Shown: in pieces, positions 1,416 to 60,594 of the stretch
How the letters are laid out: every line of letters begins with the position of its first letter
Position numbering within the stretch: position 1 is the stretch's first letter
The notes under the pieces: generated by a model
Seen by the model: only the letters and a program-made list of their open reading frames with translations
Database searches by the model: none
Told to the model about the DNA's origin: nothing
Made by a program: the position numbers and the translations under genes
Sequence record: OQ427096.1
Direction: 5' to 3' (one strand)
DNA length: 64,000 nt

Positions 1416-1421
1416 AATTAT

Positions 1422-1498: not shown

Positions 1499-1508
1499 AG
1501 TTTCAAAT

Positions 1509-1594
1509 GGATAGGTGGGCGAGTGGTTTATGCCAGCAGACTGTAAATCTGCCGCTTAATTGCATCGTTGGTTCGAATCCAACCCTATCCACCA
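1509..1594 (+). tRNA. tRNA-Tyr(GTA)
   Basis: GCAGA-CTGTAAA-TCTGC, long V arm, A73. Confidence 0.95.
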
Positions 1595-1601
1595 AGTTTA
1601 T

Positions 1602-1692
1602 GTGTCTGCTGTCGGGTTGGAGGACGGCACCGGGCTGTAACCCCGGATCCTCAAAAGGGACGTAGTAGGTTCGAATCCTACCAGGCACACCA
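1602..1692 (+). tRNA. tRNA-Tyr(GTA), divergent second copy
   Basis: CCGGG-CTGTAAC-CCCGG, long V arm, unusual D-arm, CCA. Confidence 0.85.
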
Positions 1693-1700
1693 AGTTATAT

Positions 1701-1776
1701 GGTTCCTTAGCTCAGTTGGTAGAGCAACGCTTTTACAAGGCGAAGGTCGTGGGTTCAAGTCCCTCAGGAACTACCA
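1701..1776 (+). tRNA. tRNA-Val(TAC)
   Basis: Loop TT-TAC-AA, cloverleaf, CCA. Confidence 0.9.
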
Positions 1777-1790
1777 AACGTTGAAACAGG

Positions 1791-1818
1791 TTGTGTAGAA
1801 AACAGCTTGGTATACAAT
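1791..1818 (+). promoter_or_regulatory. Putative sigma70-like promoter for the hammerhead/GOLLD unit
   Basis: TTGTGT-N16-TACAAT just upstream of the ribozyme. Confidence 0.4.
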
Positions 1819-1839
1819 AAGCAACATGAAGCAACGTCC

Positions 1840-1925
1840 AGACCACTGAAGAGTCGCCGGGACGATAAACAAAGGCACGAAACGTCGAGAGGCACAAAAC
1901 ATTAGCCTCGTGAGACGTCTGGTCT
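1840..1925 (+). ncRNA. Type I hammerhead ribozyme
   Basis: Stem I AGACCA/TGGTCT, core CTGAAGA (1846-1852), stem II GT(C)GCC/GGCAC, GAAA (1879-1882), stem III CGTC/GACG, GTC cleavage triplet (cut after 1919). Confidence 0.88.
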
Positions 1926-2760
1926 AGCAACTCAATTGTCGAAAGGCGATTGTTTAGGAATACGGTACAGTGATGTGCCTAATGGATTAAACGCCCACAA
2001 GCGGTCCGCCAGAGATGGTTCCTCTAGAACAAGTCGACATAGTGCAGCCGAAAGGTTGGCGTCTAGTATCCCTAGGCGATATGTGGAGGCTCAGTGAGAC
2101 ACGAGATTCAGGTCCAATGCCGAATGGTGAGGATTTGATCGTTTAGCGACGGTAGTGTTTCGGCTTAGCGGCAACTGACTCCAAGGACATTGAATCGGCA
2201 GGTACGTAGTTCAAGCCTTAGCGGGTAAGGGCGAGTATCAGGTCAGACGGACTAATGTTCGTACTGTATCACTCGGACGTAGGCTTAGCGGCTGAAACGA
2301 GAGGAGGTCGGGTAAGAAGCTGTCGCCCAAAAGGCTATGGACTTACGAACCTGCTCGACCTTAGTGGGCTTTCAACTTTGACGGTTAATCAAAACTACGA
2401 AAAACGCAAAGTCAGGTTCGGTCGTAAGTGAAAGTGGCTTAATCGTTGACACGAAAGTGAATCAACGCAATTTGAGGCTCGCAAGGCTGATGATTGTCTA
2501 TCAGGAAGTGCACCTAAGAGGAAGCCCCTCTGAATGGCTCGCAAGGTCAAGGGAAACGGGAAGGTAGAGTAGCTTACGATGACAGAGGAAACGCCACCTC
2601 TTTAAACTAGGCAGCCATGACGGTTAACAATGATGCATCGAAAGATGGTTGTTGTGGAAAAGTTGGGAAGGGCTCCGCAAGAGCTGATAATCCAAACGAA
2701 TGAATCGTCTCGTCAGACTGTATTCTCAGGTCGACACTTTGTTTCAAGGAGTTGTATTCC
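1920..2760 (+). ncRNA. Giant ornate RNA, GOLLD-like
   Basis: ~840 nt with no credible ORF inside a phage tRNA array; many GNRA-capped hairpins; end pairing CAACTC(1928-1933)/GAGTTG(2749-2754); motifs GAAACGAGAGGAG..CGGGTA, AACTACGAAAAA, CGCAAG, TGTATTCTCAG that I recall from GOLLD-type RNAs. Confidence 0.7.
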
Positions 2761-2800
2761 TCAAACGCTTCAATTGAAGTTTTTGCGAAATGCAATTTTT

Positions 2801-2878
2801 GGTCCCATAGTTTACGATTGGTTAGAACTCCCGCCTCTCAAGCGGAAGAATCGGGTTCGACTCCCGATGGGACTGCCA
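2801..2878 (+). tRNA. tRNA-Glu(CTC)
   Basis: Loop CT-CTC-AA, G73, CCA. Confidence 0.92.
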
Positions 2879-2886
2879 AGTTTTAT

Positions 2887-3090
2887 ACGCGTGTAGCTCA
2901 GTGGCGACGATAAGTTCAAAGACGGTAGGCATACTGTCACGCAGAGCGAGTCGAGGATTGGCGATACGACTGTGACGATACGAAGGTGGAGCTCGAGATC
3001 CTAGCTCCGACAATAACGGTACGGTCAACATTCGAGAGCGCCGGGTAGATAACCCGGAGGTCAGTGGTTCGATTCCATTTTCGCGTACCA
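2887..3090 (+). tRNA. tRNA-Ile(GAT)-like gene with ~130-nt structured insertion in the D-loop
   Basis: D-stem GCTC(2896-2899)/GAGC(3036-3039) separated by insert 2905-3034; CCGGG-TAGATAA-CCCGG; T-arm; ACCA. Confidence 0.75.
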
Positions 3091-3118
3091 TATAAGTAGA
3101 GTAGTACAAAAGTTTTAT

Positions 3119-3195
3119 CCGGGTTTAGCTCAGTCTGGCAGAGCACGCCGTTTGGGGCGGTGAGGTCGTAGGTTCGAACCCTGCAACCCGGACCA
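3119..3195 (+). tRNA. tRNA-Pro(TGG)
   Basis: CGCCG-TTTGGGG-CGGTG, CCA. Confidence 0.95.
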
Positions 3196-3209
3196 ATTAG
3201 AGAAGTGTT

Positions 3210-3449
3210 ATGGAAACTTTAGAAACGAAAGTGACACGTCTAGGCAATGGGCTTTATGGATGCAGGATCATCAGGTCAGCTGACAAGAAGCCAATTGTTG
3301 AATTAAGAGTTGAAAAGTCTCAGATTAGGAATGCTATGTTTGATATGCTCCGAACTCTAGACAAGCTGGGATATGATAGTCCTATGGCACATGCTTCGCG
3401 ACATCGCGGTAAGGCTTGTGTCACAGACTCGAAATATATCTGGCATTGA
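3210..3449 (+). CDS. hypothetical protein
   Basis: 79-aa ORF filling the gap between two tRNAs. Confidence 0.7.
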   Translation: METLETKVTRLGNGLYGCRIIRSADKKPIVELRVEKSQIRNAMFDMLRTLDKLGYDSPMAHASRHRGKACVTDSKYIWH

Positions 3450-3454
3450 TTTAT

Positions 3455-3540
3455 TCTGGACGCGCCTAATGGGGAGGCACCGGGCTGTTAACCCGGCGAT
3501 AGAAATATCCGACACGGTTCGATTCCGTGGTCCAGAGCCA
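3455..3540 (+). tRNA. tRNA-Asn(GTT) with long variable arm
   Basis: CCGGG-CTGTTAA-CCCGG, V-arm GATA-GAAA-TATC, G73, CCA. Confidence 0.8.
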
Positions 3541-3546
3541 AGATAT

Positions 3547-3622
3547 GGATTACAGGCCAACTGGTGTAGGCATGCAGCTGTTAACTGCAGATTGTTGAGT
3601 TCGATTCTCAAGTAGTCCTCCA
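3547..3622 (+). tRNA. tRNA-Asn(GTT), U73
   Basis: TGCAG-CTGTTAA-CTGCA, CCA. Confidence 0.85.
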
Positions 3623-3630
3623 AAACAAAC

Positions 3631-3705
3631 GGTCTATTAGTCTATGGGTTAAGATGCTGGCCTGTCACGCCGGCGTAACGAGTTCGAGCCTCGTATAGAC
3701 CGCCA
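3631..3705 (+). tRNA. tRNA-Asp(GTC)
   Basis: CTGGC-CTGTCAC-GCCGG, G73, CCA. Confidence 0.93.
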
Positions 3706-3712
3706 AACAAAT

Positions 3713-3792
3713 CGGGATAGGGACTGCTAGGTGTGGTCGCCGGACTGTCAATCCGGAGAGTCAGACGGATTCGAATTCCGTTATCCCGACCA
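3713..3792 (+). tRNA. tRNA-Asp(GTC), divergent second copy (A73)
   Basis: CCGGA-CTGTCAA-TCCGG, CGGGATA/TATCCCG, CCA. Confidence 0.82.
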
Positions 3793-3799
3793 AGTCAGT

Positions 3800-3872
3800 G
3801 GCGTCCTCTTCGGAGATAGTGAAGTGAGGTAAAGTACTCAATGCTCACGGAACGAATAATCAGACGCCTCCA
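3800..3872 (+). ncRNA. CCA-terminated non-tRNA hairpin RNA
   Basis: GGCGTC/GACGCC stem then TCCA; internal UUCG hairpin and GTGAG/CTCAC stem. Confidence 0.55.
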
Positions 3873-3885
3873 AAATTGAGAATGA

Positions 3886-3959
3886 TGCGCGGTCGTATAA
3901 CGGCAGTATACTGGGCTCATAACCCGGAGATGGAGGTTCGATTCCTCCCTGCGCTACCA
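3886..3959 (+). tRNA. initiator tRNA-fMet(CAT)
   Basis: 1:72 mismatch, three G-C pairs in anticodon stem, loop CT-CAT-AA. Confidence 0.9.
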
Positions 3960-3984
3960 AATGGTCAGGCTCATGACCTAACTC

Positions 3985-4042
3985 TGTGAGTATGATAAGC
4001 TTTCATGAGGCTGTCGGGACTTAACTGTTCAACTCACAACCA
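3985..4042 (+). ncRNA. CCA-terminated mini RNA
   Basis: 7-bp TGTGAGT/ACTCACA then ACCA; 58 nt. Confidence 0.5.
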
Positions 4043-4048
4043 ATCAAC

Positions 4049-4124
4049 GGGTCCGAAGCTCAAATGGCAGAGCAACTGGTTCTTACCCAGTAGGAAGTCG
4101 GTTCGATCCCGACCGGACCCACCA
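4049..4124 (+). tRNA. tRNA-Lys(CTT)
   Basis: ACTGG-TTCTTAC-CCAGT, CCA. Confidence 0.9.
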
Positions 4125-4130
4125 AACTAT

Positions 4131-4170
4131 GCGCTCGAGCAGCCGAAAGGAAGTAGCCGAGGGCGCACCA
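4131..4170 (+). ncRNA. CCA-terminated minihelix RNA
   Basis: GCGCTC/GGGCGC stem then ACCA, internal CC-GAAA-GG; 40 nt. Confidence 0.5.
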
Positions 4171-4176
4171 AACAAT

Positions 4177-4265
4177 GGACTCGTTCCCGTAGTTGGTCGA
4201 ACGGAGCGGACTCTTAATCCGACGGCGAAAGCCCATCGCAGGTTCGAATCCTGCCGGGTCCACCA
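4177..4265 (+). tRNA. tRNA with CTT (Lys) anticodon on a type II body
   Basis: CGGA-CTCTTAA-TCCG, V-arm GGC-GAAA-GCC, A73, CCA. Confidence 0.8.
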
Positions 4266-4278
4266 AAATGAGATAGAT

Positions 4279-4557
4279 ATGCCGAAGTACAATTTCAAGT
4301 GTAGCGAATGTGAGCACCGCGGTGATGTCTGGACCGGCGATACTGAAAAGGTCGACGTGGACTACAAAGACGTAGAGTGCCCTGGTTGTGGAAAAAAGAC
4401 CTACAACTATGCTCCTTGGGATTCAGGTGCTACATCTCAGTCATGGGGCCATGTGAAGCCTACAACGCTAGGAAGGCAGAAGGCTCCTCAGGATTTTAGA
4501 AACTTCCTGACACAGATTAAGAAGGCACATCCAGGTTCAACAATCCGCGATCATTGA
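4279..4557 (+). CDS. FmdB-like zinc-ribbon protein
   Basis: MPKYNFKCSECEH...CPGCG, two CxxC motifs. Confidence 0.75.
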   Translation: MPKYNFKCSECEHRGDVWTGDTEKVDVDYKDVECPGCGKKTYNYAPWDSGATSQSWGHVKPTTLGRQKAPQDFRNFLTQIKKAHPGSTIRDH

Positions 4558-4573
4558 TCAAAAAGGTGTTGCG

Positions 4574-4783
4574 ATGTACGTGTATCAAACTTATTATGAC
4601 TACACCGAAACATATTGTCATCCGAATCCTGAGCAATGGTCGGAAGAAAGGAAAGTTCTGTGTACTACTCTAGACGAGAGCTTGGCGCAAGAAGTTGCAG
4701 CCAAGCACAACGCTGAGAGCAAGGCACACAGGTGGTATAAAGAATATGCGAGAGTTGAGAAGTTTGAATTGACCTCGCGATAA
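4574..4783 (+). CDS. hypothetical protein
   Basis: ORF with AAGGTG ribosome-binding site. Confidence 0.7.
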   Translation: MYVYQTYYDYTETYCHPNPEQWSEERKVLCTTLDESLAQEVAAKHNAESKAHRWYKEYARVEKFELTSR

Positions 4784-4791
4784 AGAATCGC

Positions 4792-4865
4792 TGTTCAGTA
4801 GCTCAGTTGGTAGAGCGGCTGCCATTTAGGGCGGCAGGTCGTGGGTTCGAGACCCACTTGGACGT
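4792..4865 (+). pseudogene. tRNA-like gene with aberrant anticodon loop and no encoded CCA
   Basis: Canonical D-arm TAGCTCAGTTGGTAGAGC and T-arm; GCTGCC-ATTTAG-GGCGGC gives a 6-nt (or 8-nt) loop. Confidence 0.65.
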
Positions 4866-4944
4866 TAAGCGCTAGGGCGAATTTAAAGTACTCACATACT
4901 AGTCCGAGACAGTATCGCCCGGATCCTATAATTGTCAGCAGGTA

Positions 4945-5424
4945 ATGGTCATGCAGAAGAAAATTGACGTGAAAGCAGTCGAGGCGTTCATGCAGACGCA
5001 GAGCCCTGAGACAAAAGTTTATCTTGGAGCAGACTCCGAGAAGGTAAAAATCAATGGTAAGATGTACGCGGATTACACCGTCGTCATCGTTGTTCACATT
5101 GATGGTTGTAAGGGTTGTAAGGTATTCGCCGAGACAACTCGTGAGGAAGACTACGATAAGGACCCTTCAAAGCCGTTCACTCGGATGATGAAGGAAGCTG
5201 AAAAGGTAGCCGAGCTTCACGATCGTTTCAAGGACACCTTCTACGACTTCGAGGTTAGTATTCACCTCGACATCAACCCGAAGAAGACGGCAGGTTCAAG
5301 TATCGCAATGGAAGCGGCACGTGGTTACGTCAAGGCGATGACCATGGTTGATCCTCACTTGAAGCCTGTAGCATTTGCTGGTTCTTATGCTGCGGATCGC
5401 GCTAAAGAACTTGGTATGTGCTAA
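4945..5424 (+). CDS. RNase H-like YkuK (DUF458) family protein
   Basis: VYLGADS, IHLDIN..GSS, KP.AFAGSYAAD motifs. Confidence 0.8.
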   Translation: MVMQKKIDVKAVEAFMQTQSPETKVYLGADSEKVKINGKMYADYTVVIVVHIDGCKGCKVFAETTREEDYDKDPSKPFTRMMKEAEKVAELHDRFKDTFYDFEVSIHLDINPKKTAGSSIAMEAARGYVKAMTMVDPHLKPVAFAGSYAADRAKELGMC

Positions 5425-5431
5425 GAGATAT

Positions 5432-5517
5432 GCCCCTGTAGGCGAATTGGTATAGCTACTGGCCTTAGAAGCCAGCGCCGAAAGGCATTGACGGTTCGAG
5501 TCCGTCCAGGGGTACCA
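5432..5517 (+). tRNA. tRNA-Leu(TAG)
   Basis: CTGGC-CTTAGAA-GCCAG, long V arm. Confidence 0.95.
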
Positions 5518-5524
5518 AATATGT

Positions 5525-5600
5525 GTCGGAGTAGCTCAGTTGGTAGAGCGGTAGCTTGAAAAGTTACGCGTCGCAGGTTCGATTCCTGTCTCCGATACCA
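5525..5600 (+). tRNA. tRNA-Phe(GAA)
   Basis: GTAGC-TTGAAAA-GTTAC, CCA. Confidence 0.93.
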
Positions 5601-5663
5601 AAACACCGTCACTCAGGTCCCTCGGTGCAAAATAAGGGAATACTCAGGAGAGGAGATTGTAGT

Positions 5664-5849
5664 ATGAAGTTGCCTTCGCGTTTTCAAATCGGTGATAAGG
5701 TTCTCGCTGGTCGTCTTGATGGTGGGAGCAAAGGTGAAGTAATTGGTGTACACTTCAACCGATACAAAGTATCGTATGATGTGGTCGACGAGTTGACCCA
5801 ACGTACAAAGAAGCACCTCAGTGAACGGGTTCATCCTGTCACAGAGTAA
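5664..5849 (+). CDS. hypothetical protein (SH3/KOW-like pattern)
   Basis: AGGAG RBS; FQIGDKV..KGEVIGV. Confidence 0.65.
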   Translation: MKLPSRFQIGDKVLAGRLDGGSKGEVIGVHFNRYKVSYDVVDELTQRTKKHLSERVHPVTE

Positions 5850-5869
5850 ATACAGATATAAGACAATTT

Positions 5870-5944
5870 GCATCGTTAGCTGAGATGGATTAGCGCTTGC
5901 CTGAAGAGCTCGAGAGGTTGGTTCGATACCAACACGATGCACCA
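5870..5944 (+). tRNA. tRNA-Phe(GAA), weak anticodon stem
   Basis: Loop CT-GAA-GA, only ~2-3 stem pairs, acceptor GCATCGT/ACGATGC. Confidence 0.75.
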
Positions 5945-5959
5945 AACAAAGGAACGTGA

Positions 5960-6208
5960 ATGAGCTTTAAGCCGGTTAATACTTTCGTCATCGTAAAGCG
6001 TAGGGAAGAAGATACAACGAGTCAGGGAGGCATCATCATCTCTGGATCAGTTGATCATAACCTCTTCACTGTTGTGGCCAAGAATGATCTTGTGACATTC
6101 GTTGAGCCCGGTGATACGGTAGTAATCAACATTCGCGAAGCAGCTGAAATCGACGATGTACATTACGCAGTTGATGCAAAGCACATCTTCACCAAGGTTT
6201 CTAAGTAA
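5960..6208 (+). CDS. GroES-like co-chaperonin
   Basis: FKPVNTFVIVKRREEDTTSQGGIII..V.PGDTV, GroES mobile-loop pattern. Confidence 0.8.
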   Translation: MSFKPVNTFVIVKRREEDTTSQGGIIISGSVDHNLFTVVAKNDLVTFVEPGDTVVINIREAAEIDDVHYAVDAKHIFTKVSK

Positions 6209-6217
6209 GACAGTTTT

Positions 6218-6294
6218 GCCCAGGTGACGGAATTGGTATACGTACTGTCCTCAGAAGGCAGGTTTTGAGGGTTCGAGTCCCTCTCTGGGTACCA
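6218..6294 (+). tRNA. tRNA-Leu(CAG) with short variable loop
   Basis: CTGTC-CTCAGAA-GGCAG, V loop GTTTT, A73. Confidence 0.88.
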
Positions 6295-6304
6295 AAGTTT
6301 CAGT

Positions 6305-6382
6305 GTTCCACGTGTCGGAATTGGTAGACGAGCCAGACTGTGAATCTGGAGTTTGCGGGTTCGAGCCCCGTCGTGGTCCCCA
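6305..6382 (+). tRNA. tRNA-His(GTG)
   Basis: CCAGA-CTGTGAA-TCTGG, G-1:C73, two mismatches at top of acceptor stem. Confidence 0.85.
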
Positions 6383-6428
6383 AAGTTGATCAGGTGATTC
6401 GCCACCTTAGAGTGCGAAATTGAAATAT

Positions 6429-6503
6429 TGCCTGTTAGCTCAGTGGTAGAGCAATCGCCCGATAAGCGATAGGTCGTCAGTTCGATCCTGACACGGGCAA
6501 CCA
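6429..6503 (+). tRNA. tRNA-Ile(GAT), C33
   Basis: ATCGC-CCGATAA-GCGAT, CCA. Confidence 0.9.
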
Positions 6504-6507
6504 ATAA

Positions 6508-6581
6508 GCCTTCATAGCTCAAAGGTAGAGCACTCGCCCGATAAGCGATAGACCTAGGATCGTTACCTAGTGAAGGCACCA
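6508..6581 (+). tRNA. tRNA-Ile(GAT), C33, second copy
   Basis: TCGC-CCGATAA-GCGA, T-loop ATCGTTA. Confidence 0.88.
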
Positions 6582-6586
6582 AACCG

Positions 6587-6615
6587 TTGACGAAACAGCG
6601 TAAGGGCGCTAAAGT
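6587..6615 (+). promoter_or_regulatory. sigma70-like promoter
   Basis: TTGACG-N17-TAAAGT. Confidence 0.6.
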
Positions 6616-6619
6616 AGTA

Positions 6620-6775
6620 CGCAACAAGGTATTCTAGTTGGAGCCTTGCAAAGAGCCGGACTGTTAAAGGTTGCGGCGAGACTAGATTGGTAGCTTAATT
6701 AGCTTACGGTGCATCATATGTTGCTAGGGTATGATGACTCAGAAGCCTTCGGGAACCCTTAACTTAGCTACAAAT
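6620..6775 (+). ncRNA. Unidentified structured RNA(s)
   Basis: Non-coding downstream of promoter; stems TCTAGT/ACTAGA and TAGCT/AGCTA, CC-TTCG-GG hairpin. Confidence 0.4.
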
Positions 6776-6780
6776 TCTAT

Positions 6781-6858
6781 AGCCCAGTCGTTTAGTTGGT
6801 CCAAGACGCCGTCCTTTGAAGTCGGTCATCGTAGGTTCGAATCCTACCTGGGTTGCCA
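6781..6858 (+). tRNA. tRNA-Gln(TTG)
   Basis: Loop CT-TTG-AA, G73, CCA. Confidence 0.9.
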
Positions 6859-6865
6859 AGTTTGA

Positions 6866-6939
6866 TGCCTCTTAGTTCAATGGTAGAATGTCGCTCTCTG
6901 AAAGCGAAGACAACGGATCGATACCGTTAGAGGCTGCCA
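6866..6939 (+). tRNA. tRNA-Gln(CTG)
   Basis: TCGCT-CTCTGAA-AGCGA, G73, CCA. Confidence 0.9.
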
Positions 6940-6944
6940 AATAT

Positions 6945-7065
6945 GGGACTGTGCCGGATAGCTCCCGGACATTATGATGTGAGTAGGTTAGCCTGACTAG
7001 GGTGTTTGGTGCATCAGGCACCATCTGAAAGACTAATCCAAAGTTGATTGATGCAGGTCCCGCCA
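6945..7065 (+). ncRNA. CCA-terminated multi-hairpin RNA
   Basis: GGGACT/GGTCCC stem then GCCA; internal hairpins CCGG/CCGG, GGTGC/GCACC, TAATC/GATTG. Confidence 0.45.
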
Positions 7066-7252
7066 GATGCAAAAGTAAGACTAGCCGTTCAAGTCGGTAA
7101 GCACATGGTGTGCACCATGCCGCGTTAGGTGTGGAGGAGGCGTTCGAATCGTCGGTGGTTGCCAGGCCCCTATAGACACTGCTTGCAAGAGGGATTTAAA
7201 GTAACCAAATGAGGTCGCTCCTCGCGGAACAGTTCCCTCGGTACTATTCTAT

Positions 7253-7364
7253 GAAGGTTGTAGCTCAAAGGTAGAGCGCCGGGTGTCGGACCCGGGTCAA
7301 AGAGTATGAAGTTCGCGCGAACTGTCTGCTCAGGTGCAGGAGTCGAAGCCTGCCAGCCTTCCCA
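7253..7364 (+). tRNA. Atypical tRNA-like gene (TCG in anticodon position) with ~40-nt variable arm
   Basis: 8-bp GAAGGTTG/CAGCCTTC then CCA; canonical D-arm; CCGGG-TGTCGGA-CCCGG; V-arm with AGTTC-GCGC-GAACT; 8-nt T-loop. Confidence 0.65.
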
Positions 7365-7384
7365 CTAATTGATAATTAGAGACG

Positions 7385-7669
7385 ATGAGACAGTTTAACC
7401 TTCGAGGTAAGAAGACATATCGTCCTGGCTGTGGTTGTTGCGTTGTTGAAAACTTCAAGCCAGAAATCATTGACAAGATTCACGCATACGAAATGCGTAA
7501 TCCAGATGAATTCGCTCTCACAGCAGACGATTTCGATTGTGTAGAAGATTTTCTCATTTATATTGATGTTCCCGTTGACCAAGTTTGTTATGATAGTTCA
7601 CACTGCGCTCCCTTCGAAGGCAAGGAAGAAAGCCAAGAAGAAGGTTGTACCGACAAGGACGCCAGTTAA
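7385..7669 (+). CDS. hypothetical protein
   Basis: ORF after tRNA; CGCC motif. Confidence 0.55.
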   Translation: MRQFNLRGKKTYRPGCGCCVVENFKPEIIDKIHAYEMRNPDEFALTADDFDCVEDFLIYIDVPVDQVCYDSSHCAPFEGKEESQEEGCTDKDAS

Positions 7670-7913
7670 GAAGTTCGTTGAAAAGAAACGACAGTTCATT
7701 CCCAAGATCCCCGTTTACCGTGCAGCAGGAACCGAGCACATCCGATCCCATGGATTGGAGAAGGTGCCGCCTAAACTGGAACGTCCAATCGTGTATCATG
7801 GTGATATGGCTGAACGTGAAGCGGCTGCTCAAGATCAAATTGAGTACCGCGAGCATTTGGTTAGAAACGCTTTCCGTAACGGGAAGGTATCGGCATGCTA
7901 CATTTCAGGATGA
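7590..7913 (+). CDS. hypothetical basic protein
   Basis: Lys-rich N-terminus; abuts next gene. Confidence 0.6.
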   Translation: MIVHTALPSKARKKAKKKVVPTRTPVKKFVEKKRQFIPKIPVYRAAGTEHIRSHGLEKVPPKLERPIVYHGDMAEREAAAQDQIEYREHLVRNAFRNGKVSACYISG

Positions 7914-7916
7914 CCT

Positions 7917-8147
7917 ATGAATACTGTGATTGAAAAGACTGACAAGGGTGTGATCAAAGGCGCGGTGTTCATCGTCGCCGGCGATAGGCATTGGGTTGAG
8001 GGTAATGTCTACGGCAACCCCAACTTCAAGGATGGCACCTATATCCACACGTCCAAGATTGTTGCAGTTCGTGGACGCCGCATTGAAACCCTGAACTCGT
8101 TCTACACTTGCGAGTTCCACGTTGATGGACCTGTTCGCCTATGGTAA
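7917..8147 (+). CDS. hypothetical protein
   Basis: Tightly packed ORF; GTYIHTSKIV motif typical of small phage proteins. Confidence 0.7.
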   Translation: MNTVIEKTDKGVIKGAVFIVAGDRHWVEGNVYGNPNFKDGTYIHTSKIVAVRGRRIETLNSFYTCEFHVDGPVRLW

Positions 8148-8461
8148 CCCAAGTTCGTATTCTGATTGATGAGTGTGGTGCACCTCTGGATTCCATTGTT
8201 GAAGTGACCGAAATCTTGGATGATGGTCACATCATGTATACCTGGGAAGACATCACCTTCATGGCTTCACCGGAAGCCTGGGCATTGCATTATCCGGATT
8301 CTGCATATGGATATGATTCTCAGAGCGCTGGCACAGACATCAACTACGAGATTTTGAGAAACGCCGCTGAGCAATTCTTGGTGTTTGTTGAGGAAGAAAA
8401 ACTCGACGAAGCTGCCATTGATTACTTCTACGACGTGTTCAAGGAAACTCTCGGTAAGTAG
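8141..8461 (+). CDS. hypothetical protein
   Basis: Overlapping co-oriented ORF. Confidence 0.7.
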   Translation: MVTQVRILIDECGAPLDSIVEVTEILDDGHIMYTWEDITFMASPEAWALHYPDSAYGYDSQSAGTDINYEILRNAAEQFLVFVEEEKLDEAAIDYFYDVFKETLGK

Positions 8462-8574
8462 AAATATTGGAGCGTAACTCAGCCAGGTGGCTGACGCTGT
8501 TTGCTAAACAGTTGGGACCCTATGAACGGGTCTGGGGATCGAGACCTCTGCGCTCCGCCAATTTGGATTTGATC

Positions 8575-9093
8575 ATGAAAATCGTGCTGCTTGATCTTGA
8601 GCAAACTGTGATCGACGACTGGGAGCACATGAACCTGCTTCCAGGAAACCTCGATAAGATTCGCTGGGCAATTCAGCACACTGGCTGTAAGCTGGGATTG
8701 ATGTCCTGGGCTGTATGGAATGAGGTGGACAAAGAGACGTTCAAGAAGCGCCTGCAAGGTCCACTCGAAGAAGTGCTTGGTATGAAGTTCTCCGAAGATC
8801 TTATCTTCTCCATGCACGACTTCTCAGACATAATTCTTAAGCGACGTCGGAAATGGCTTAGCCGTGATGATATGTTCGACCTGTTTGGCAAGGAAGAGTG
8901 TCTACTCCAGCTGCTGAGGCTTGAACACTTCGGAAAGAATGCTCGCGTTACTCTGATTGATGACGTGGTTGATCACAACATGGAATTCACCAAAGGCGCT
9001 TCCAAGGTGCGTTTCATCAACGTGACCAATCCTCAGTACAAGCATTGGAATATCAATGAAACTGTCCATGACTATGGCAGTTGGAGAGAATGA
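8575..9093 (+). CDS. HAD-like hydrolase (variant)
   Basis: MKIVLLDLEQTVID (motif I-like) and TLIDD (motif IV-like). Confidence 0.55.
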   Translation: MKIVLLDLEQTVIDDWEHMNLLPGNLDKIRWAIQHTGCKLGLMSWAVWNEVDKETFKKRLQGPLEEVLGMKFSEDLIFSMHDFSDIILKRRRKWLSRDDMFDLFGKEECLLQLLRLEHFGKNARVTLIDDVVDHNMEFTKGASKVRFINVTNPQYKHWNINETVHDYGSWRE

Positions 9094-9452
9094 TGGAAGA
9101 ACTTGCTCCTCAGAAAGGCAATATGCCTGACAGCTTCATCCTCGTTCGTACATCTGCAGGCGTTCATGTGCTTGGTGGTTGGAGCGGTGGCTATCTCTAC
9201 GGCGATAGCTGGCGTCTCAGCACTGCATTGAAGCGCGTAGTTGAGTACGATGGTGATTGGGTAGTTGTTGAAACAAGATCAGGTTCGACCTATGCCCTAC
9301 CGACACAAGCAGCCATTCGCCGTTATACTTTGACTGTGACGACTTCGGGCGTGTTTAACTCGTTCGACCGTCAGGCAAAGGAACAAGGAATCCTCTTTGA
9401 AGCGATTCCGGAATCCGAATTCAACGATGTAATCAACCAACTGGAAAATTGA
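9090..9452 (+). CDS. conserved phage hypothetical protein
   Basis: VLGGWSGGYLYGDSWR motif. Confidence 0.75.
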   Translation: MMEELAPQKGNMPDSFILVRTSAGVHVLGGWSGGYLYGDSWRLSTALKRVVEYDGDWVVVETRSGSTYALPTQAAIRRYTLTVTTSGVFNSFDRQAKEQGILFEAIPESEFNDVINQLEN

Positions 9453-11279: not shown

Positions 11280-11289
11280 GATGTCAAAA

Positions 11290-11318
11290 GCCAGGGCTTT
11301 AATCGGTCCTGGCTTTTT
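11290..11318 (+). terminator. Intrinsic terminator closing the tRNA array
   Basis: GCCAGGGC/GTCCTGGC hairpin + TTTTT. Confidence 0.8.
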
Positions 11319-23897: not shown

Positions 23898-24344
23898 ATG
23901 AACCGTGAACGTCTGATCTACATCGCTGAGTGGCTGGAAGCTGGCGCTCCGCATAAGGGCAAAGTGAAGGGCTTCGACATTTCCGTCGGTGTGCAGGCGC
24001 TCAAGAGCGATGCACCTTCCTGTGGTACCACCTGCTGCATTGCCGGTGCGGCTACGCAGTTCTTCAACGACGAAGATGGCGAGCTGGCCAACGCCGCTTT
24101 TGGCTTCAGCGAGTGGCAGGAAGATGATGCCACCAATGAAGCCGAGTGGGATGCGGTCTTCTATGAAGCGCAGGACCTGCTGGAGCTGGATCATAAGACC
24201 GCAGTCGACCTTTTCATTCCGGTCGGTGCAACCGGTATCTACGCTGAAGGCACCAACTGGTCGGATTTCAACGACCCCTACAAGACCGCACGCGTCATCC
24301 GCAATCTGCTGGAGACCGGCAAGGTCGACTGGAGCATCGAATAA
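23898..24344 (+). CDS. hypothetical protein
   Basis: CGTTCCIAGAA motif. Confidence 0.75.
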   Translation: MNRERLIYIAEWLEAGAPHKGKVKGFDISVGVQALKSDAPSCGTTCCIAGAATQFFNDEDGELANAAFGFSEWQEDDATNEAEWDAVFYEAQDLLELDHKTAVDLFIPVGATGIYAEGTNWSDFNDPYKTARVIRNLLETGKVDWSIE

Positions 24345-25231
24345 TGAAGGCAACTCTGACCATCGGTGTGTCTGCCTCGGGTAAGACCACCTGGGCGCTG
24401 TCTCAGCCGGGCGAAGTGCTGAGCCGCGACAACTACCGTTGGTCCATCATGGAAGAGAAGGGCATCTCGCCTTCCTGGACCAACTGGAAGTGGAAGTGGG
24501 AAAATCTGGTCACTGAACGCGTCGATGCCGACCTGGCACTGTGCGCGGCTCAGGGTAAGGATATCATCATCGCCGATACGAACTTGAACGAGAACGTTCG
24601 TGGCGCGATGGCTGCCAAGCTGGAAGCTCTGGGTTACACCGTCGAATACAAGTTCTTCGATGTGACTTGGGATGAAGCTGTTCGTCGCGACAACGAGCGT
24701 GCGCATGGTGTCGGCTATTCTGTGCTGCAGAAGCAGCATCAGCAGTTCCTGGACAACCATGTTGGTCGTCTCGCCGCAGACGCTGACAAGGGGACTCGTA
24801 AGGCTGCCATCGTCGACATTGATGGAACCGTGGCTCTGATGGAAGGCGTTCGTGGACCGTTCGAGTGGCACAAGGTGCACCTGGACAAGCCGCATACTCC
24901 GATCATCGATATGGTCAAGGGTCTGATGGCAGCTGGGTACTTCATCCTGTTCACCTCTGGTCGCAGTGATGAGTGCTTCGACCTGACCGAGAACTGGCTG
25001 CAGAGCGTCTTCGCCCCCGATGGCTACTGGCACGGCGACTGTCGTTTGCTGATGCGCGAAGCTTCGGATCAGCGTAAGGACACGATCGTGAAGGAAGAGA
25101 TCTACATGCGCCATATCCACTACAACTACGACGTGCAGATCGTTCTGGATGACCGTCCGAGCGTGTGCCGTATGTGGCGTGACCTGGGTCTGAACGTCGT
25201 GCAGGTCGGCAATCCCTACATCGAGTTCTAA
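24344..25231 (+). CDS. pseT: polynucleotide 5'-kinase/3'-phosphatase
   Basis: P-loop GVSASGKTT, SRD; HAD DIDGT and DDR motifs. Confidence 0.95.
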   Translation: MKATLTIGVSASGKTTWALSQPGEVLSRDNYRWSIMEEKGISPSWTNWKWKWENLVTERVDADLALCAAQGKDIIIADTNLNENVRGAMAAKLEALGYTVEYKFFDVTWDEAVRRDNERAHGVGYSVLQKQHQQFLDNHVGRLAADADKGTRKAAIVDIDGTVALMEGVRGPFEWHKVHLDKPHTPIIDMVKGLMAAGYFILFTSGRSDECFDLTENWLQSVFAPDGYWHGDCRLLMREASDQRKDTIVKEEIYMRHIHYNYDVQIVLDDRPSVCRMWRDLGLNVVQVGNPYIEF

Positions 25232-54224: not shown

Positions 54225-55340
54225 ATGTATCTGCAGTTGTCAGACTTTGACCACCTCCGCGAAAACCCGAACGTGCGTTTCCGCGAAGAGAACGTCGCCG
54301 GTAAAGATGTCGTCATCATCTCTTACATGCTTTCCAGCGACGAGCTGTGGAAGCTGCCGCTCGGTGTGGAATGCCGTGGCATCACCTTCGATGCCCAAAC
54401 GGGTAAGCTGATCTCGCTGCCGTTCGAGAAGTTCTTCAATGTCAACGAGAAGGCGCACACCCAGGCTCACATCATCCGTGACTACAAGGTGCAGGCTGTC
54501 CTGGACAAGCGCGACGGTTCGATGATCACGCCGATCTGGGCTGATGGTCGTATCTATCTCAAGACCAAGAAGACCTTCACCTCCGACGTCGCAGTGGCAG
54601 CTCAGCGCCCCCTTTCTGTCGAGCTGGAACGCTTCTGTGAAGCCATGCTCGAACTGAACTTCACTCCGATCTTCGAGTTCACCGATCCTGACTGCAAGAT
54701 CGTCCTCGACTACGGTCATGACTCTCAGCTTGTGCTGCTGGCGATGCGCGATATGATCGACGGCTCCTATGTCTCGTACAAGGACCTGGACCAGATTTCC
54801 AAGGCTTGGGGTGTGCAACTGGTTGGCGGCTATAACCATGACTATACCGTTGATGGCTACCTCGAGCTCGCAAAGACTGCTGAGGGCATCGAAGGCTGGG
54901 TCATCTACACCGATGAAGGTCGCTACAAGGTCAAGACAAAGTGGTACTGTGATCGCCATCACCTGATCGATATTCGTGAGCGCGATATCGCTGCCCTGGT
55001 ACTCGAAGAGAAGCTGGACGACCTGATCCCGAACCTGCTCGCAGGTGATGCGGATATGGAAGCCATCCGCGAGATCGAGCGCCGTGTGACCGATGGCATT
55101 TCGCACATCATGGAAACCGTTGCCTTCCTTGGTGTCCATGCAAGTGGTATCGACCTGGGTAAGGATCGTGCCGATTGGGTCAACGCCAACTGTGGCAAGC
55201 TGTCGAAGTTTGTCCATCGTGCAGCTCGTGGTGTGGAGAACTCTGACGAGTCCTTCAAGGAGTTCTATCGTCAGCACTATCTCAGCACCTTCTCACTCCG
55301 GTCAATCGGCAACCCCAATTTCCGCGACGAGGAAGAATAA
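54225..55340 (+). CDS. rnlA: RNA ligase 1 (T4 RnlA-like)
   Basis: ECRGITF, PFEKFFN, motif I KRDGSMI, FEF, EGWV, KVKTKWY. Confidence 0.93.
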   Translation: MYLQLSDFDHLRENPNVRFREENVAGKDVVIISYMLSSDELWKLPLGVECRGITFDAQTGKLISLPFEKFFNVNEKAHTQAHIIRDYKVQAVLDKRDGSMITPIWADGRIYLKTKKTFTSDVAVAAQRPLSVELERFCEAMLELNFTPIFEFTDPDCKIVLDYGHDSQLVLLAMRDMIDGSYVSYKDLDQISKAWGVQLVGGYNHDYTVDGYLELAKTAEGIEGWVIYTDEGRYKVKTKWYCDRHHLIDIRERDIAALVLEEKLDDLIPNLLAGDADMEAIREIERRVTDGISHIMETVAFLGVHASGIDLGKDRADWVNANCGKLSKFVHRAARGVENSDESFKEFYRQHYLSTFSLRSIGNPNFRDEEE

Positions 55341-59240: not shown

Positions 59241-59521
59241 TGGAAAACGATTTCGGCATTGACTATCACCTCAACATCATGAACAACGGGCGCCCAACGC
59301 CTTCGGACTATCTCCCTCCTCGCCCAGAGAAATGCCTCTGGAAGATCATCTCGTTCGATGGCTACTATGCCACCTACCGCACCGAATGCGGACAGCTGGA
59401 AGATATCCGTGCTGAGGAATGCGTTGGCATGCCGATGATCCCCGAGCCTCAAGGCAAGTACTGCCATCATTGCGGTGGCAGGCTGCATGTGAACTCGTCG
59501 TTCAAAAGGAAGACACACTGA
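59237..59521 (+). CDS. hypothetical protein, Cys-rich
   Basis: C.W...Y.TECG...YC.HCGG. Confidence 0.65.
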   Translation: MMENDFGIDYHLNIMNNGRPTPSDYLPPRPEKCLWKIISFDGYYATYRTECGQLEDIRAEECVGMPMIPEPQGKYCHHCGGRLHVNSSFKRKTH

Positions 59522-60594
59522 TGAAGTTCTACATCGTGGGTGGCGCAGTTCGCGATCATCTGATGGGCAAGGTCCCGAAAGACATTGACTACGTTGTGGT
59601 TGGTGCCACTCCTGAAGACATGCTGGACATGGGACTGAAACAGGTCGGCGCCGACTTCCCTGTCTTCATCGACGAGGCTGGCACGGAGTTCGCTCTGGCT
59701 CGTACCGAACGAAAGACAGGCGTTGGTTACAATGGTTTCACCACTGACCACAGCACATCGGTGACGTTGGAAGAGGATCTGTCTCGCCGTGACCTGACCA
59801 TCAACGCTATGGCAATGGTGAAAGACAGCCAGGCAATCATCGACCCGTTCAACGGCGTTGCGGACATCGAAGACAAGATCCTGCGCCATGTCTCTCTGGC
59901 CTTTGTGGAGGATCCTGTGCGTGTGCTTCGCATCGCTCGTTTCCGTGCAAGGCTGGGCGAGGACTGGACCATCGCACCTGATACCATGGTACTGCTGAAA
60001 GAGATGGTGCGCCGAGGCGACTTGGCTCATCTGACGCGTGAGCGTGTGCTGTTGGAAATGGAAAAGGCATTCGGTGAGCCGTACCCCGATATCTTCTTCT
60101 CGACTTTGAAAGAGATCGGAGCCCTAGACGTGGTCTTCCCTCACTTGTTCATGATCGACAAGCTGGACTATCAAGAGATAAGAAAGGCTGCCGGCACATC
60201 GCCGGCGTTTGTCTACTCCGTTGTCTCTCTGATCATGCCTGAGACGAGTGCTGATTACTTCGGCGAACGGCTGCGCGTCTCCAACGAGTGGCGACAGATG
60301 GCTGTCATGTATCGCGCCATGATGAATAGCCGAATGGATTCCAATCAGGTAGACATCCTGTACAAGATGGATGCCTACAGGAAACATCATGTGTGGGATG
60401 CTCTGCTGAGAGAACTGGTCAAGACTGGAAGGAGTCGTGAGAGGTTCTACAACGATCTGTTCGTTGTCTGGTGTTCAACCAGTCGAATGAGCTTCACCGA
60501 ATTGACCGAATGGCAGCGTGATAACCTCAAGGGTCCGGAGATTGCTGAGGCCATCAAACAGCTGCGCAAGAAGGTGATCAATGAAACTCGGTGA
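59521..60594 (+). CDS. cca: tRNA nucleotidyltransferase (CCA-adding, class II)
   Basis: VGGAVRD.L....KDID, VGADFPVF, EFALARTERK, EDLSRRDLTINAMA, EDPVRVLR.ARF. Confidence 0.95.
   Translation: MKFYIVGGAVRDHLMGKVPKDIDYVVVGATPEDMLDMGLKQVGADFPVFIDEAGTEFALARTERKTGVGYNGFTTDHSTSVTLEEDLSRRDLTINAMAMVKDSQAIIDPFNGVADIEDKILRHVSLAFVEDPVRVLRIARFRARLGEDWTIAPDTMVLLKEMVRRGDLAHLTRERVLLEMEKAFGEPYPDIFFSTLKEIGALDVVFPHLFMIDKLDYQEIRKAAGTSPAFVYSVVSLIMPETSADYFGERLRVSNEWRQMAVMYRAMMNSRMDSNQVDILYKMDAYRKHHVWDALLRELVKTGRSRERFYNDLFVVWCSTSRMSFTELTEWQRDNLKGPEIAEAIKQLRKKVINETR

What the first reader, a model, noticed from the sequence alone, without database searches (positions are those of the whole stretch)
3800..7065. Four non-tRNA RNAs ending in a helix plus NCCA (40, 58, 73 and 121 nt)
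Seen: 3800-3872 (GGCGTC/GACGCC-TCCA), 3985-4042 (TGTGAGT/ACTCACA-ACCA), 4131-4170 (GCGCTC/GGGCGC-ACCA) and 6945-7065 (GGGACT/GGTCCC-GCCA). Each occupies a tRNA-sized slot in the array but has no D, anticodon or T arm. Known: T4 stable RNAs C and D are CCA-ended non-tRNAs of unknown role, and minihelices can be aminoacylated or bound by CCA-adding enzymes. Inference: natural acceptor-end minihelices that could decoy acceptor-end toxins or CCA-clipping nucleases.
Basis: partly seen in the sequence, partly recalled or inferred. Interest (0 to 1): 0.72.

Follow-up and report, generated by a model that had tools for sequence, protein, structure and literature searches.

The report
CCA-ended non-tRNA modules, phage array
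Between the tRNA genes of Xanthomonas phage X1 lie four small elements that copy only a tRNA's end (closing helix plus CCA); they are probably cut out by the tRNA-processing enzymes, and one is a conserved folded RNA while three are strain-specific cassettes of unknown use.

Summary
The window is the last 64 kb of Xanthomonas phage X1, a T4-like phage with about 40 tRNA genes.

**Observation.** All four elements are exactly where and as described. They have no detectable tRNA core. A bare "6-bp helix + NCCA" is common by chance (1.1-1.7 per kb). These four stand out because they fill inter-tRNA slots in register (shuffle P about 0.001, 0.001, 0.0003 and 0.012) and share the tRNA junction context (U-1/G+1, CCA|A).

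**Comparison with relatives.** c1-c3 are unique, strain-specific cassettes. Close relatives lack them or carry unrelated sequence in the same slot, and the indels run CCA to CCA. c4 is conserved. Its closing helix covaries, and its central 65 nt are fully diverged yet keep a hairpin in the same register.

**Best reading.** These are acceptor-framed, non-decoding RNAs released by RNase P and 3' trimming, like T4 RNA C/D or P1 C4 RNA. The frames were probably inherited from tRNA genes whose cores were replaced.

**Decoy idea.** It is untested. The phage does encode a CCA-adding enzyme, Pnkp and Rnl1.

**Caveat.** No expression data exist.

The scan noted c1-c3 before on this same genome (s1-157540), not on other DNA.

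The parts
3800..3872 (+). c1: 73-nt non-tRNA module. 6-bp closing helix (3800-3805 / 3863-3868), discriminator U, CCA 3870-3872. Its 7-nt leader ends in U-1.
   Evidence: Absent from phage BUDD and from a 72.9-kb Logan contig. Replaced by an unrelated 41 nt in L010. No homologue in 50,697 phage records.
3960..3984 (+). 25-nt leader of c2 holding a small hairpin (GGTCA...TGACC). It is gained and lost together with c2.
   Evidence: A C>T change at 3966 in a relative turns C-G into U.G.
3985..4042 (+). c2: 58-nt non-tRNA module. 7-bp closing helix (3985-3991 / 4032-4038), discriminator A, CCA 4040-4042. Predicted three-way junction with two weak hairpins.
   Evidence: Present in the 72.9-kb Logan contig; absent from BUDD and L010. 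No homologue elsewhere.
4131..4170 (+). c3: 40-nt interrupted hairpin capped by a GAAA loop. Closing helix 4131-4136 / 4161-4166 (one G.U), discriminator A, CCA 4168-4170. A register shifted by 2 nt competes.
   Evidence: Absent from L010. The same slot in BUDD holds an unrelated ~70-nt element (L002 4520-4589), also 6-7 bp helix + G + CCA. No homologue elsewhere.
6945..7065 (+). c4: 121-nt conserved structured RNA. P1 closing helix 6945-6952 / 7053-7061 (8 bp with one bulge), then G + CCA (7062-7065).
   Evidence: P1 is 100% paired in three phages, with one compensatory change (A-U to G-C) and one G-C to G.U. A 292-nt metagenome contig joins 7065 directly to 7247, so the CCA is a module boundary.
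6954..6968 (+). c4 P2: hairpin in the position of a tRNA D arm.
   Evidence: Two indels between X1 and BUDD/L010 lengthen both strands of the stem together.
6984..7042 (+). c4 central domain (P4 6986-6994 / 7030-7038 plus inner hairpins). Its sequence is completely different in L010, but the length is the same and it again forms a hairpin in the same register.
   Evidence: 6 of 8 P4 pairs are changed on both sides and kept. 94% of cells are paired, against about 40% when partners are slid.
59521..60594 (+). Context: phage class II nucleotidyltransferase (CCA-adding type).
   Evidence: Annotation. Pfam PolyA_pol head 1.6e-22 plus RNA-binding domain.
24344..25231 (+). Context: T4-type polynucleotide kinase-phosphatase (Pnkp).
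   Evidence: Pfam HAD_PNKP 5e-42 and AAA_33.
54225..55340 (+). Context: T4 Rnl1-type RNA ligase.
   Evidence: Pfam RNA_lig_T4_1 6e-28.
11286..11317 (+). Context: the only strong intrinsic-terminator-like site of the array, just after the last tRNA. This fits long polycistronic transcription across c1-c4.

Best explanation
c1-c4 are non-decoding RNA modules built into a polycistronic phage tRNA array. They keep only the processing frame of a tRNA:
- a short leader ending in U;
- a 6-8 bp helix joining the 5' and 3' ends;
- one unpaired discriminator base;
- an encoded CCA followed by A.

**Inferred mechanism.** The host type-A RNase P reads the helix plus RCCA and cuts at the 5' end. RNase E and 3' exonucleases trim back to the helix-protected CCA. 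Each module is thus released as a discrete, stable, CCA-ended small RNA, and the upstream tRNA is left with only a short trailer that is easy to trim.

**Origin.** The frames were most likely inherited from tRNA genes whose cores were replaced. This process is seen directly in this clade.

**Status of each element.**
- c4 is a genuine structured ncRNA under selection. It has a conserved scaffold and a fast-evolving central hairpin. Its role is unknown.
- c1-c3 are strain-specific accessory cassettes with no evidence yet of selection on their cores.

**Shown versus inferred.** Shown: anatomy, non-random placement, module behaviour, and covariation in c4. Inferred: transcription, RNase P cleavage and CCA 3' ends.
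For: - **Placement.** The elements fill their slots in register: shuffle P of 0.001, 0.0012 and 0.00025 and 0.012.
- **Junction context.** It matches the 36 tRNAs, where -1 is T in 25/36, +1 after CCA is A in 34/36 and CCA is encoded in 35/36. c1, c3 and c4 have T-1/G+1, and c1-c3 have CCA|A.
- **Indel boundaries.** Indels between X1, BUDD, L010 and a fourth contig remove or insert exactly [leader+body+CCA]. The downstream spacer is left identical.
- **Shared frame, unrelated cores.** Five mutually unrelated cores (c1-c4 and BUDD slot 3) share only helix+NCCA.
- **Array survey.** In 8 related arrays, 10 of 37 CDS-free inter-tRNA gaps hold a slot-filling helix+NCCA, against 0.36 expected.
- **c4 structure.** P1 covaries and the diverged central domain keeps its helix register.
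- **Core replacement seen directly.** The interior of the neighbouring tRNA-Arg-like gene 7254-7364 was swapped within a retained acceptor/D frame in L010.
- **Transcription unit.** There is no strong terminator inside the array, only one at its end.
- **Literature.** RNase P cleaves hairpin model substrates and natural non-tRNA RNAs, including phage M3 RNA and phage C4 antisense RNA (PMC11143913). The 3' RCCA motif matters for cleavage (PMC12710915). RNase P can separate polycistronic tRNA units (PMC2190699).
Against: - No RNA data exist. No public run holds this phage as RNA, so the ends are unproven.
- The closing helices are only 6-8 bp and there is no T stem-loop, so the normal S-domain contact of RNase P is missing.
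- c1 has a pyrimidine discriminator.
- c2 has C-1/U+1 and a 25-nt leader.
- The NCCA-register helix of c3 is only 30-45% populated.
- Folding z-scores are weak.
- c1-c3 have no diverged homologues, so nothing shows selection on them.
- T-arm-less modules of this kind were not found in 9 other arrays surveyed.
Confidence: 0.55

Rival explanations
1. Decoy or sponge. Once released, the CCA-ended helices compete with tRNAs for host enzymes that attack or modify the acceptor end. Examples are DUF1814 nucleotidyltransferase toxins of the MenT/AbiEii type, acceptor-stem nucleases and CCA-trimming exonucleases. The modules would thereby protect the tRNA pool, alongside the phage's CCA-adding enzyme.
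For: - Toxins that modify tRNA acceptor ends exist and belong to an abortive-infection family (PMC7450476, PMC10435456; bioRxiv 10.64898/2026.01.19.700257).
- The phage carries a CCA-adding enzyme, Pnkp and Rnl1.
- c1-c3 turn over between near-identical phages as counter-defence loci do.
- The only feature shared by five unrelated cores is the acceptor-like end.
Against: - There is no direct evidence of any kind.
- Four single-copy modules would be outnumbered by about 40 phage tRNAs plus the host pool, all of which present the same end.
- The acceptor stems do not obviously copy any one tRNA.
- The host's toxin repertoire could not be examined.
- BUDD and L010 do well without c1 and c2.
Confidence: 0.12
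2. Inert relics. c1-c3 are gutted tRNA pseudogenes or structured spacers. Their helix and CCA are inherited, or are by-products of recombination at CCA(A) microhomology. They are tolerated but have no function of their own, and may not accumulate.
For: - c1-c3 occur in only 1-2 of 4-5 close relatives.
- They have no homologues in 50,697 phage records (c1-c3); an exact c3 core pattern also found nothing in IMG/VR.
- Truncated tRNA remnants exist in related arrays: L003 753-784 and 6327-6387.
- Hairpin spacers without CCA are common in other phage arrays.
- L010's slot-1 hairpin ends in CCUA, not CCA.
- The indels are flanked by CCAA repeats.
Against: - If decay were neutral, the closing helix should erode like the rest. 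Yet c1 and c2 keep perfect 6-7 bp helices while no trace of D, anticodon or T arms remains.
- Exactly one unpaired base separates helix and CCA in all of them.
- This reading does not apply to c4, which covaries.
Confidence: 0.25
3. Antisense regulators released by RNase P, like C4 RNA of phages P1/P7. Loops of c1-c4 would pair with phage or host mRNAs.
For: The precedent of the RNase P-processed C4 antisense RNA (PMC11143913). The modules also have exposed loops.
Against: The longest complementarity of c1-c4 to either strand of the whole 200-kb X1 genome is 11-14 nt. That lies within the range given by shuffled queries. Host targets were not testable.
Confidence: 0.05
4. Pure coincidence: ordinary spacer sequence that happens to contain a helix and CCA.
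For: The bare motif occurs 1.1-1.7 times per kb. Four other hits lie in the same 3.3 kb.
Against: - Slot-filling probabilities are 0.00025-0.0012 for each of three adjacent gaps.
- The survey found 10 such gaps against 0.36 expected.
- c4 covaries.
- Module boundaries fall at the CCA.
Confidence: 0.03

Closest known systems
Phage T4 small stable RNAs, species 1 (rnaC) and species 2 (rnaD)
   Same: - Non-decoding RNAs of about 120-140 nt.
- They are encoded at the end of a T4-type phage tRNA cluster and co-transcribed with tRNAs.
- Their function has been unknown for 50 years.
- rnaD runs into a genomic ACCA.
   Different: - No sequence similarity to c1-c4.
- rnaC keeps a T arm and has no encoded CCA.
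- In rnaD the 5' end is not paired to the 3' end.
- c1-c4 are interleaved between tRNAs rather than appended, and three of them are much smaller.
RNase P-processed non-tRNA phage RNAs: C4 antisense RNA of P1/P7, M3 RNA of phi80
   Same: Small phage RNAs whose 5' end is made by host RNase P because they mimic a tRNA end (PMC11143913). From my own knowledge, not checked here: C4 has a closing helix followed by a CCA-containing 3' end.
   Different: - They are not embedded in tRNA arrays.
- C4 has a defined antisense target, and none was found here.
- No homology.
Synthetic tRNA minihelices / RNase P hairpin model substrates (acceptor stem + T stem-loop + NCCA)
   Same: A helix plus single-stranded NCCA is enough for recognition by RNase P (PMC11143913). 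From general knowledge, it also suffices for CCA-adding enzymes and some synthetases. c3 is a 40-nt interrupted hairpin of about 11 bp with ACCA.
   Different: - Natural, not designed.
- No T loop.
- c1, c2 and c4 are branched or much longer.
- A closer natural minihelix is L003 753-784 in a distant relative, which keeps the T-loop sequence.
t-elements of plant mitochondria, and mascRNA-type tRNA-like RNAs
   Same: tRNA-end mimics whose job is to recruit the tRNA-processing enzymes and so define RNA ends (PMC1920247; PMC6152437 for a plant example).
   Different: Those keep an acceptor stem and a T-arm-like domain, and they are eukaryotic or organellar. Here the neighbours are tRNAs that need no help in being cut.

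Membership tests
tRNA (Rfam RF00005 / cloverleaf) | D arm, anticodon arm with 7-nt loop, and T arm with T-loop consensus | tested here: not met
   - ARAGORN calls none at default settings, and finds no + strand call inside c1-c3 even at -ps60.
- No RF00005 hit at E<=10.
- Interiors are not similar to 237 array tRNAs.
- c4 has only a D-position hairpin.
tRNA (Rfam RF00005 / cloverleaf) | 7-bp acceptor stem, one discriminator base, 3' CCA | tested here: met
   6-8 bp closing helices, one unpaired base, and an encoded CCA. The seventh pair is a mismatch in c1 and c4.
tRNA minihelix (acceptor + T stem-loop) | About 12 bp of coaxial helix capped by a 7-nt T loop, then NCCA | tested here: not met
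   No TTCRA T-loop motif in c1-c4. Only c3 approaches the shape, with about 11 interrupted bp and a GAAA loop.
T4 rnaC / rnaD | Sequence or structure homology to the T4 RNAs | tested here: not met
   BLAST of the region and of c1-c3 against 50,697 phage records finds only X1 and BUDD. The T4 RNAs fold differently.
T4 rnaC / rnaD | Non-tRNA stable RNA encoded within and co-processed with a phage tRNA cluster | tested here: inconclusive
   Location is met. Stability and co-processing are not testable without RNA data.
Natural non-tRNA RNase P substrates (C4, M3, 4.5S, tmRNA precursors) | 5' end generated by RNase P | not testable with these tools
   Only the determinants can be read from sequence: U-1/G+1 in c1, c3 and c4, and RCCA in c2, c3 and c4.
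YrlA / Y RNA (RF02553) | Match to the covariance model | tested here: not met
   The only sub-threshold hits (22 and 17 bits against a gathering score of 69) lie on tRNA pairs elsewhere, not on c1-c4.

The most novel reading that the evidence does not exclude
The phage keeps a small, rapidly exchanged set of 'acceptor-end only' RNAs as bait for host enzymes that recognise the tRNA 3' end, such as MenT/AbiEii-type nucleotidyltransferases, acceptor-stem nucleases or CCA-trimming exonucleases. c4 would be a conserved scaffold that displays a fast-evolving hairpin. Together with the phage CCA-adding enzyme, Pnkp and Rnl1, this would form an RNA-based counter-defence layer for the tRNA pool.
Probability: 0.1. 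Interest if true: 0.8.

Novelty: new variant of a known kind. Interest (0 to 1): 0.4.

Why it matters
Phage tRNA clusters are now seen as counter-defence loci against tRNA-targeting immunity, yet the non-tRNA RNAs within them have had no assigned role since T4 RNA C and D were found.

This array suggests that a tRNA's processing frame (leader, closing helix, discriminator, CCA) can be separated from its decoding body. The frame can then carry unrelated cores that are gained, lost and swapped as units.

- If the modules are indeed released as CCA-ended RNAs, they give a natural system for asking what the minimal frame for RNase P and 3' maturation is in vivo.
- c4 offers a tractable conserved RNA with a hypervariable domain for functional study.
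- If c1-c3 prove to be inert, they document how tRNA genes are gutted and recycled in hyperplastic phage regions.

Tried and rejected
1. **Degenerate tRNAs.** Rejected using ARAGORN at lowered thresholds, a permissive Rfam scan, and similarity of the interiors to 237 tRNAs.
2. **Any Rfam family.** None at E<=10.
No rRNA-family hit appeared in the permissive Rfam scan. Reading by eye, I saw no GTPase-centre or sarcin-ricin motif. Not pursued further.
4. **Homologues of c1-c3 and c4.**
   - Phage records: only X1 itself for c1-c3, and BUDD as well for c4.
   - IMG/VR exact patterns: none.
   - JGI metagenome patterns for c4: none in two scans.
   - Covariance model of c4 against five distant arrays and the rest of the X1 genome: only itself.
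5. **Homology among c1-c4, BUDD slot 3 and L010 slot 1.** None.
6. **Antisense targets in the X1 genome.** Nothing above shuffles.
7. **RNA evidence.** No run holds the phage as RNA. The 'RNA?' wastewater runs are probably DNA and hold only fragments.
8. **Fetching the 72.9-kb Logan contig that carries c2 and c3.** Exact-protein look-ups with two X1 proteins returned only X1 and L010.
9. **A general class of T-arm-less CCA-ended modules.** Not seen in XacN1, DSS3P8, nt-1, T4, DLP_6 or four metagenomic relatives. There, slot-fillers with NCCA all keep a T loop, and other spacers are hairpins without CCA.
10. **Host toxin repertoire and host tRNA acceptor stems.** No host genome handle was available.

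Full report
**Identity and setting.** The window is the last 64 kb of Xanthomonas phage X1 (OQ427096.1; window position = record position minus 136058). X1 is a 200-kb T4-like myovirus isolated on X. campestris pv. campestris 8004.
- Positions 1-11300 form one + strand array. ARAGORN tRNAs there, and there is a GOLLD RNA.
- Several small ORFs and many odd tRNA-like elements are interleaved.
- The only strong terminator-like hairpin lies just after the last tRNA, at 11286-11317.
- 35 of 36 tRNAs encode CCA. The base before the tRNA is T in 25 of 36. The base after CCA is A in 34 of 36, often as CCA-AGTTTTA.
- Elsewhere the phage encodes a class II nucleotidyltransferase of the CCA-adding type, a T4-type Pnkp and an Rnl1-type RNA ligase.

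**The observation.** The four elements read exactly as reported. None is a tRNA.
- ARAGORN finds nothing on the + strand even at 60% thresholds.
- Rfam gives nothing at E<=10.
- With the closing helix removed, their interiors are no more similar to 237 tRNAs from this and related arrays than shuffled sequence is (P 0.3-0.8). Two T-arm-bearing tRNA-like elements of the same array score as expected (P<=0.03).

**Is it more than chance?** The bare criterion is weak. A 6-bp helix (at most one G.U) followed by NCCA within 35-135 nt occurs 1.1-1.7 times per kb in the rest of the window on both strands. Four further hits lie inside 3800-7065, in CDS or nested in c4. Position is what singles out c1-c4.
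- c1, c2 and c3 fill three consecutive CDS-free gaps between tRNAs. They start 7, 25 and 6 nt after the upstream CCA and end 13, 6 and 6 nt before the next tRNA.
- In 20,000 dinucleotide shuffles of each gap, a helix+NCCA filling the slot at least as well arises with P=0.001, 0.0012 and 0.00025.
- For c4, which starts 5 nt after tRNA-Gln, the corresponding P is 0.012.
- c1, c3 and c4 have the array's typical T-1/G+1 junction, and c1-c3 have CCA|A.
- The closing helix dominates the ensemble for c1 and c2 (p>=0.98, outermost c2 pair about 0.8) and for isolated c4 (0.79-1.0). For c3 it reaches only 0.3-0.4, because a register shifted by two bases is slightly more stable.
- Whole-molecule z-scores are unimpressive.

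**Comparison with relatives.** Four relatives are informative:
- phage BUDD (L002, about 89% identical over the region);
- a 20.7-kb Logan contig (L010, near-identical to X1 in flanking sequence);
- a 72.9-kb Logan contig seen only through read laying;
- a 292-nt wastewater contig.

Presence and absence by element:
- c1 is present only in X1. BUDD and the 72.9-kb contig join the tRNA-Asp end directly to the downstream spacer. L010 has an unrelated 41-nt hairpin there that ends in CCUA rather than CCA.
- c2, with its 25-nt hairpin leader, is present in X1 and the 72.9-kb contig. It is absent from BUDD and L010.
- c3 is present in X1 and the 72.9-kb contig and absent from L010. BUDD's slot holds an unrelated ~70-nt element that again has a 6-7 bp closing helix, G and CCA.

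Every indel removes exactly [leader + body + CCA] and leaves the downstream spacer unchanged. For example, ATCAAC and AACAAT are identical in X1 and L010. A canonical tRNA-Leu (6218-6294) is missing from BUDD in the same manner. The modules therefore behave in evolution just as tRNA genes do. c1-c3 have no homologue in 50,697 phage records, an exact c3 core pattern found nothing in IMG/VR, and they are not related to one another.

**c4 is a conserved structured RNA.** It is present in X1, BUDD, L010, the 72.9-kb contig and the wastewater contig. In the wastewater contig, position 7065 is joined directly to 7247, which marks the CCA as a module boundary. Evidence from the three-sequence alignment:
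- The closing helix P1 (8 bp with one bulge) is paired in every sequence. It carries one compensatory A-U to G-C change and one G-C to G.U change.
- Hairpin P2, in the D-arm position, differs between X1 and BUDD/L010 by two indels that lengthen both strands together.
- The central ~65 nt are completely different in L010, although the sequence on either side is about 99% identical. The replacement has the same length and again forms a hairpin whose closing stem sits in the same alignment register.
- In that stem, 6 of 8 pairs are changed on both sides and kept. Overall 94% of cells are paired, against about 40% when partners are slid by 1-3 columns.

Caveats: there are only three sequences, two of them nearly identical, and the structure was derived from these same sequences. 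A covariance model of c4 finds nothing in five more distant arrays or in the rest of the X1 genome. Two metagenome pattern scans found nothing.

The neighbouring tRNA-Arg(TCG)-like gene (7254-7364) shows the same kind of event. L010 keeps its acceptor stem and D arm but has a different anticodon arm, extra arm and T arm. Core replacement within a retained frame is thus an observed process in this clade.

**How general is it?**
- Across eight related arrays, 10 of 37 CDS-free inter-tRNA gaps of 35-170 nt hold a slot-filling helix+NCCA, against 0.36 expected from shuffles.
- Outside the X1/BUDD clade, all of these keep a T-loop sequence. They are tRNA-like RNAs or truncated tRNAs that ARAGORN does not call. 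One is a 32-nt acceptor-plus-T-loop hairpin in L003.
- In XacN1, DSS3P8, nt-1 and T4, short gaps hold hairpins without CCA or T-loop-bearing remnants.
- In this sample, T-arm-less CCA-ended modules are therefore a peculiarity of the X1 clade.

**Mechanism.** The shared feature of five unrelated cores is the tRNA processing frame.
- Bacterial RNase P recognises a helix with a 3' RCCA. It cleaves hairpin model substrates and natural non-tRNA RNAs, including phage M3 and C4 RNAs (PMC11143913, PMC12710915).
- In polycistronic tRNA transcripts, RNase P and RNase E separate the units and exonucleases trim back to the CCA (PMC2190699).
- I therefore infer that c1-c4 are cut out like tRNAs and persist as CCA-ended small RNAs.
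- A frame at the 5' edge of a structured insert also leaves the upstream tRNA with only a 5-7 nt trailer. That gives a reason for the frame to be kept even if the core is a passenger.
- The frames were most simply inherited from tRNA genes whose cores were replaced.

The covariation in c4 argues that it has a function of its own. For c1-c3 the data cannot separate 'accessory but useful' from 'recent and inert'.

**Rival readings.**
- *Decoy.* The decoy hypothesis has a real conceptual anchor. MenT/AbiEii-family nucleotidyltransferase toxins modify tRNA acceptor ends (PMC7450476, PMC10435456), and the phage carries end-repair enzymes. No evidence here supports it, however, and stoichiometry argues against four single-copy genes competing with about 40 phage tRNAs plus the host pool.
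- *C4-like antisense role on phage transcripts.* This is disfavoured. The longest complementarity anywhere in the 200-kb genome is 11-14 nt, as for shuffled queries.
- *Pure chance.* This is disfavoured by the placement statistics and by c4.

**Comparison with known RNAs.** The closest known are T4 RNA C and D.
- On the T4 record, rnaD runs into a genomic ACCA but its 5' end is not paired with its 3' end.
- rnaC keeps a T arm and has no encoded CCA.
- Functionally, the nearest analogues are RNase P-processed phage RNAs (C4, M3) and tRNA-like processing signals such as plant mitochondrial t-elements (PMC1920247).

**Verdict.** These are real, non-random, tRNA-framed non-tRNA modules: one conserved structured RNA (c4) and three strain-specific cassettes (c1-c3). 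This is a new variant of a known kind, namely small non-decoding RNAs that ride on phage tRNA processing. Interest is moderate. The decoy interpretation remains speculation. The same three small elements were noted earlier by this scan on this same genome (s1-157540), not on other DNA.

Noticed in passing
window 8469-8560, 10167-10255, 10262-10348, 10779-10865: Four tRNA-Ser-like genes with anticodons GCU, CGA, UGA and GGA. All have an 8-bp acceptor stem, a 4-bp T stem, a long extra arm and GCCA, which is the '8/4' geometry described for allo-tRNAs (PMC5389517). ARAGORN calls only one of them, and the Rfam tRNA model gives no hit at E<=1. Their MFE folds are clean cloverleaves, with z about -3.3 to -3.7 for three and -1.5 for the ARAGORN-called 10262-10348.
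   Followed up: partly
window 6582-6780: A ~200-nt non-coding gap between tRNA-Ile and tRNA-Gln. A long-range helix (UAAGGG...CCCUUA) encloses several hairpins. There are a few compensatory changes against BUDD, and L010 is 99.5% identical. It has no NCCA end and no Rfam hit. Probably another structured RNA.
   Followed up: partly
window 7066-7253: A stretch 98-99% identical in X1, BUDD and L010, which is more conserved than the flanking tRNA-Gln genes. It holds a tRNA-like element (about 7079-7164) with a T arm and a GUGC-capped hairpin, ending in GCCA. That end reads GTCA in L010.
   Followed up: partly
window 7254-7364: A tRNA-Arg(TCG)-like gene of 111 nt with a long extra arm (Rfam tRNA 31.7 bits). 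In L010 the acceptor stem and D arm are kept, but the anticodon arm, extra arm and T arm are replaced.
   Followed up: partly
window 1-11300 (spacers): The inter-tRNA spacers share a consensus, CCA-AGTTTTA. Module gains and losses between X1, BUDD and L010, including a canonical tRNA-Leu at 6218-6294, are bounded by these repeated CCA(A)/AGTTT motifs. This suggests recombination between spacers as the route of cassette turnover.
   Followed up: partly
L003 753-784 and 6327-6387: A distant relative's array holds two tRNA remnants. One is a 32-nt hairpin made of an acceptor-like helix, a T-loop sequence and ACCA, a natural 'minihelix'. The other is a 3' half of a tRNA (T arm plus ACCA) with a degenerate 5' half.
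   Followed up: partly
window 4951-5424: The RNase H-like DUF458/YkuK gene (PF04308) sits inside the tRNA array here and in many other large phages. It has 3,642 homologues at E<=1e-20 and appears in 77 phage records, often beside tRNAs. Its role in tRNA arrays is unknown.
   Followed up: no
window 4792-4865: A tRNA-like gene that ARAGORN reports with an undetermined anticodon. It is the only one in the array without an encoded CCA (it ends ...GGA-CGT). It is 100% conserved in BUDD together with about 60 nt downstream.
   Followed up: no
window 3960-3984 versus 4003-4013: By eye, the hairpin leader of c2 (CAGGCTCATGA) is 10/11 complementary to the interior of c2 (TCATGAGGCTG). An alternative long-range pairing is therefore possible, although the MFE keeps the two hairpins separate.
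   Followed up: no
window 2303-2732, 250-343, 706-838, 2887-3103: The same array also holds a GOLLD RNA (179 bits) and other unusual tRNA-like elements already noted by the scan. In one search I confirmed only that 250-343 has a 7-bp helix + UCCA; reading the sequence by eye I also saw a T arm there.
   Followed up: no
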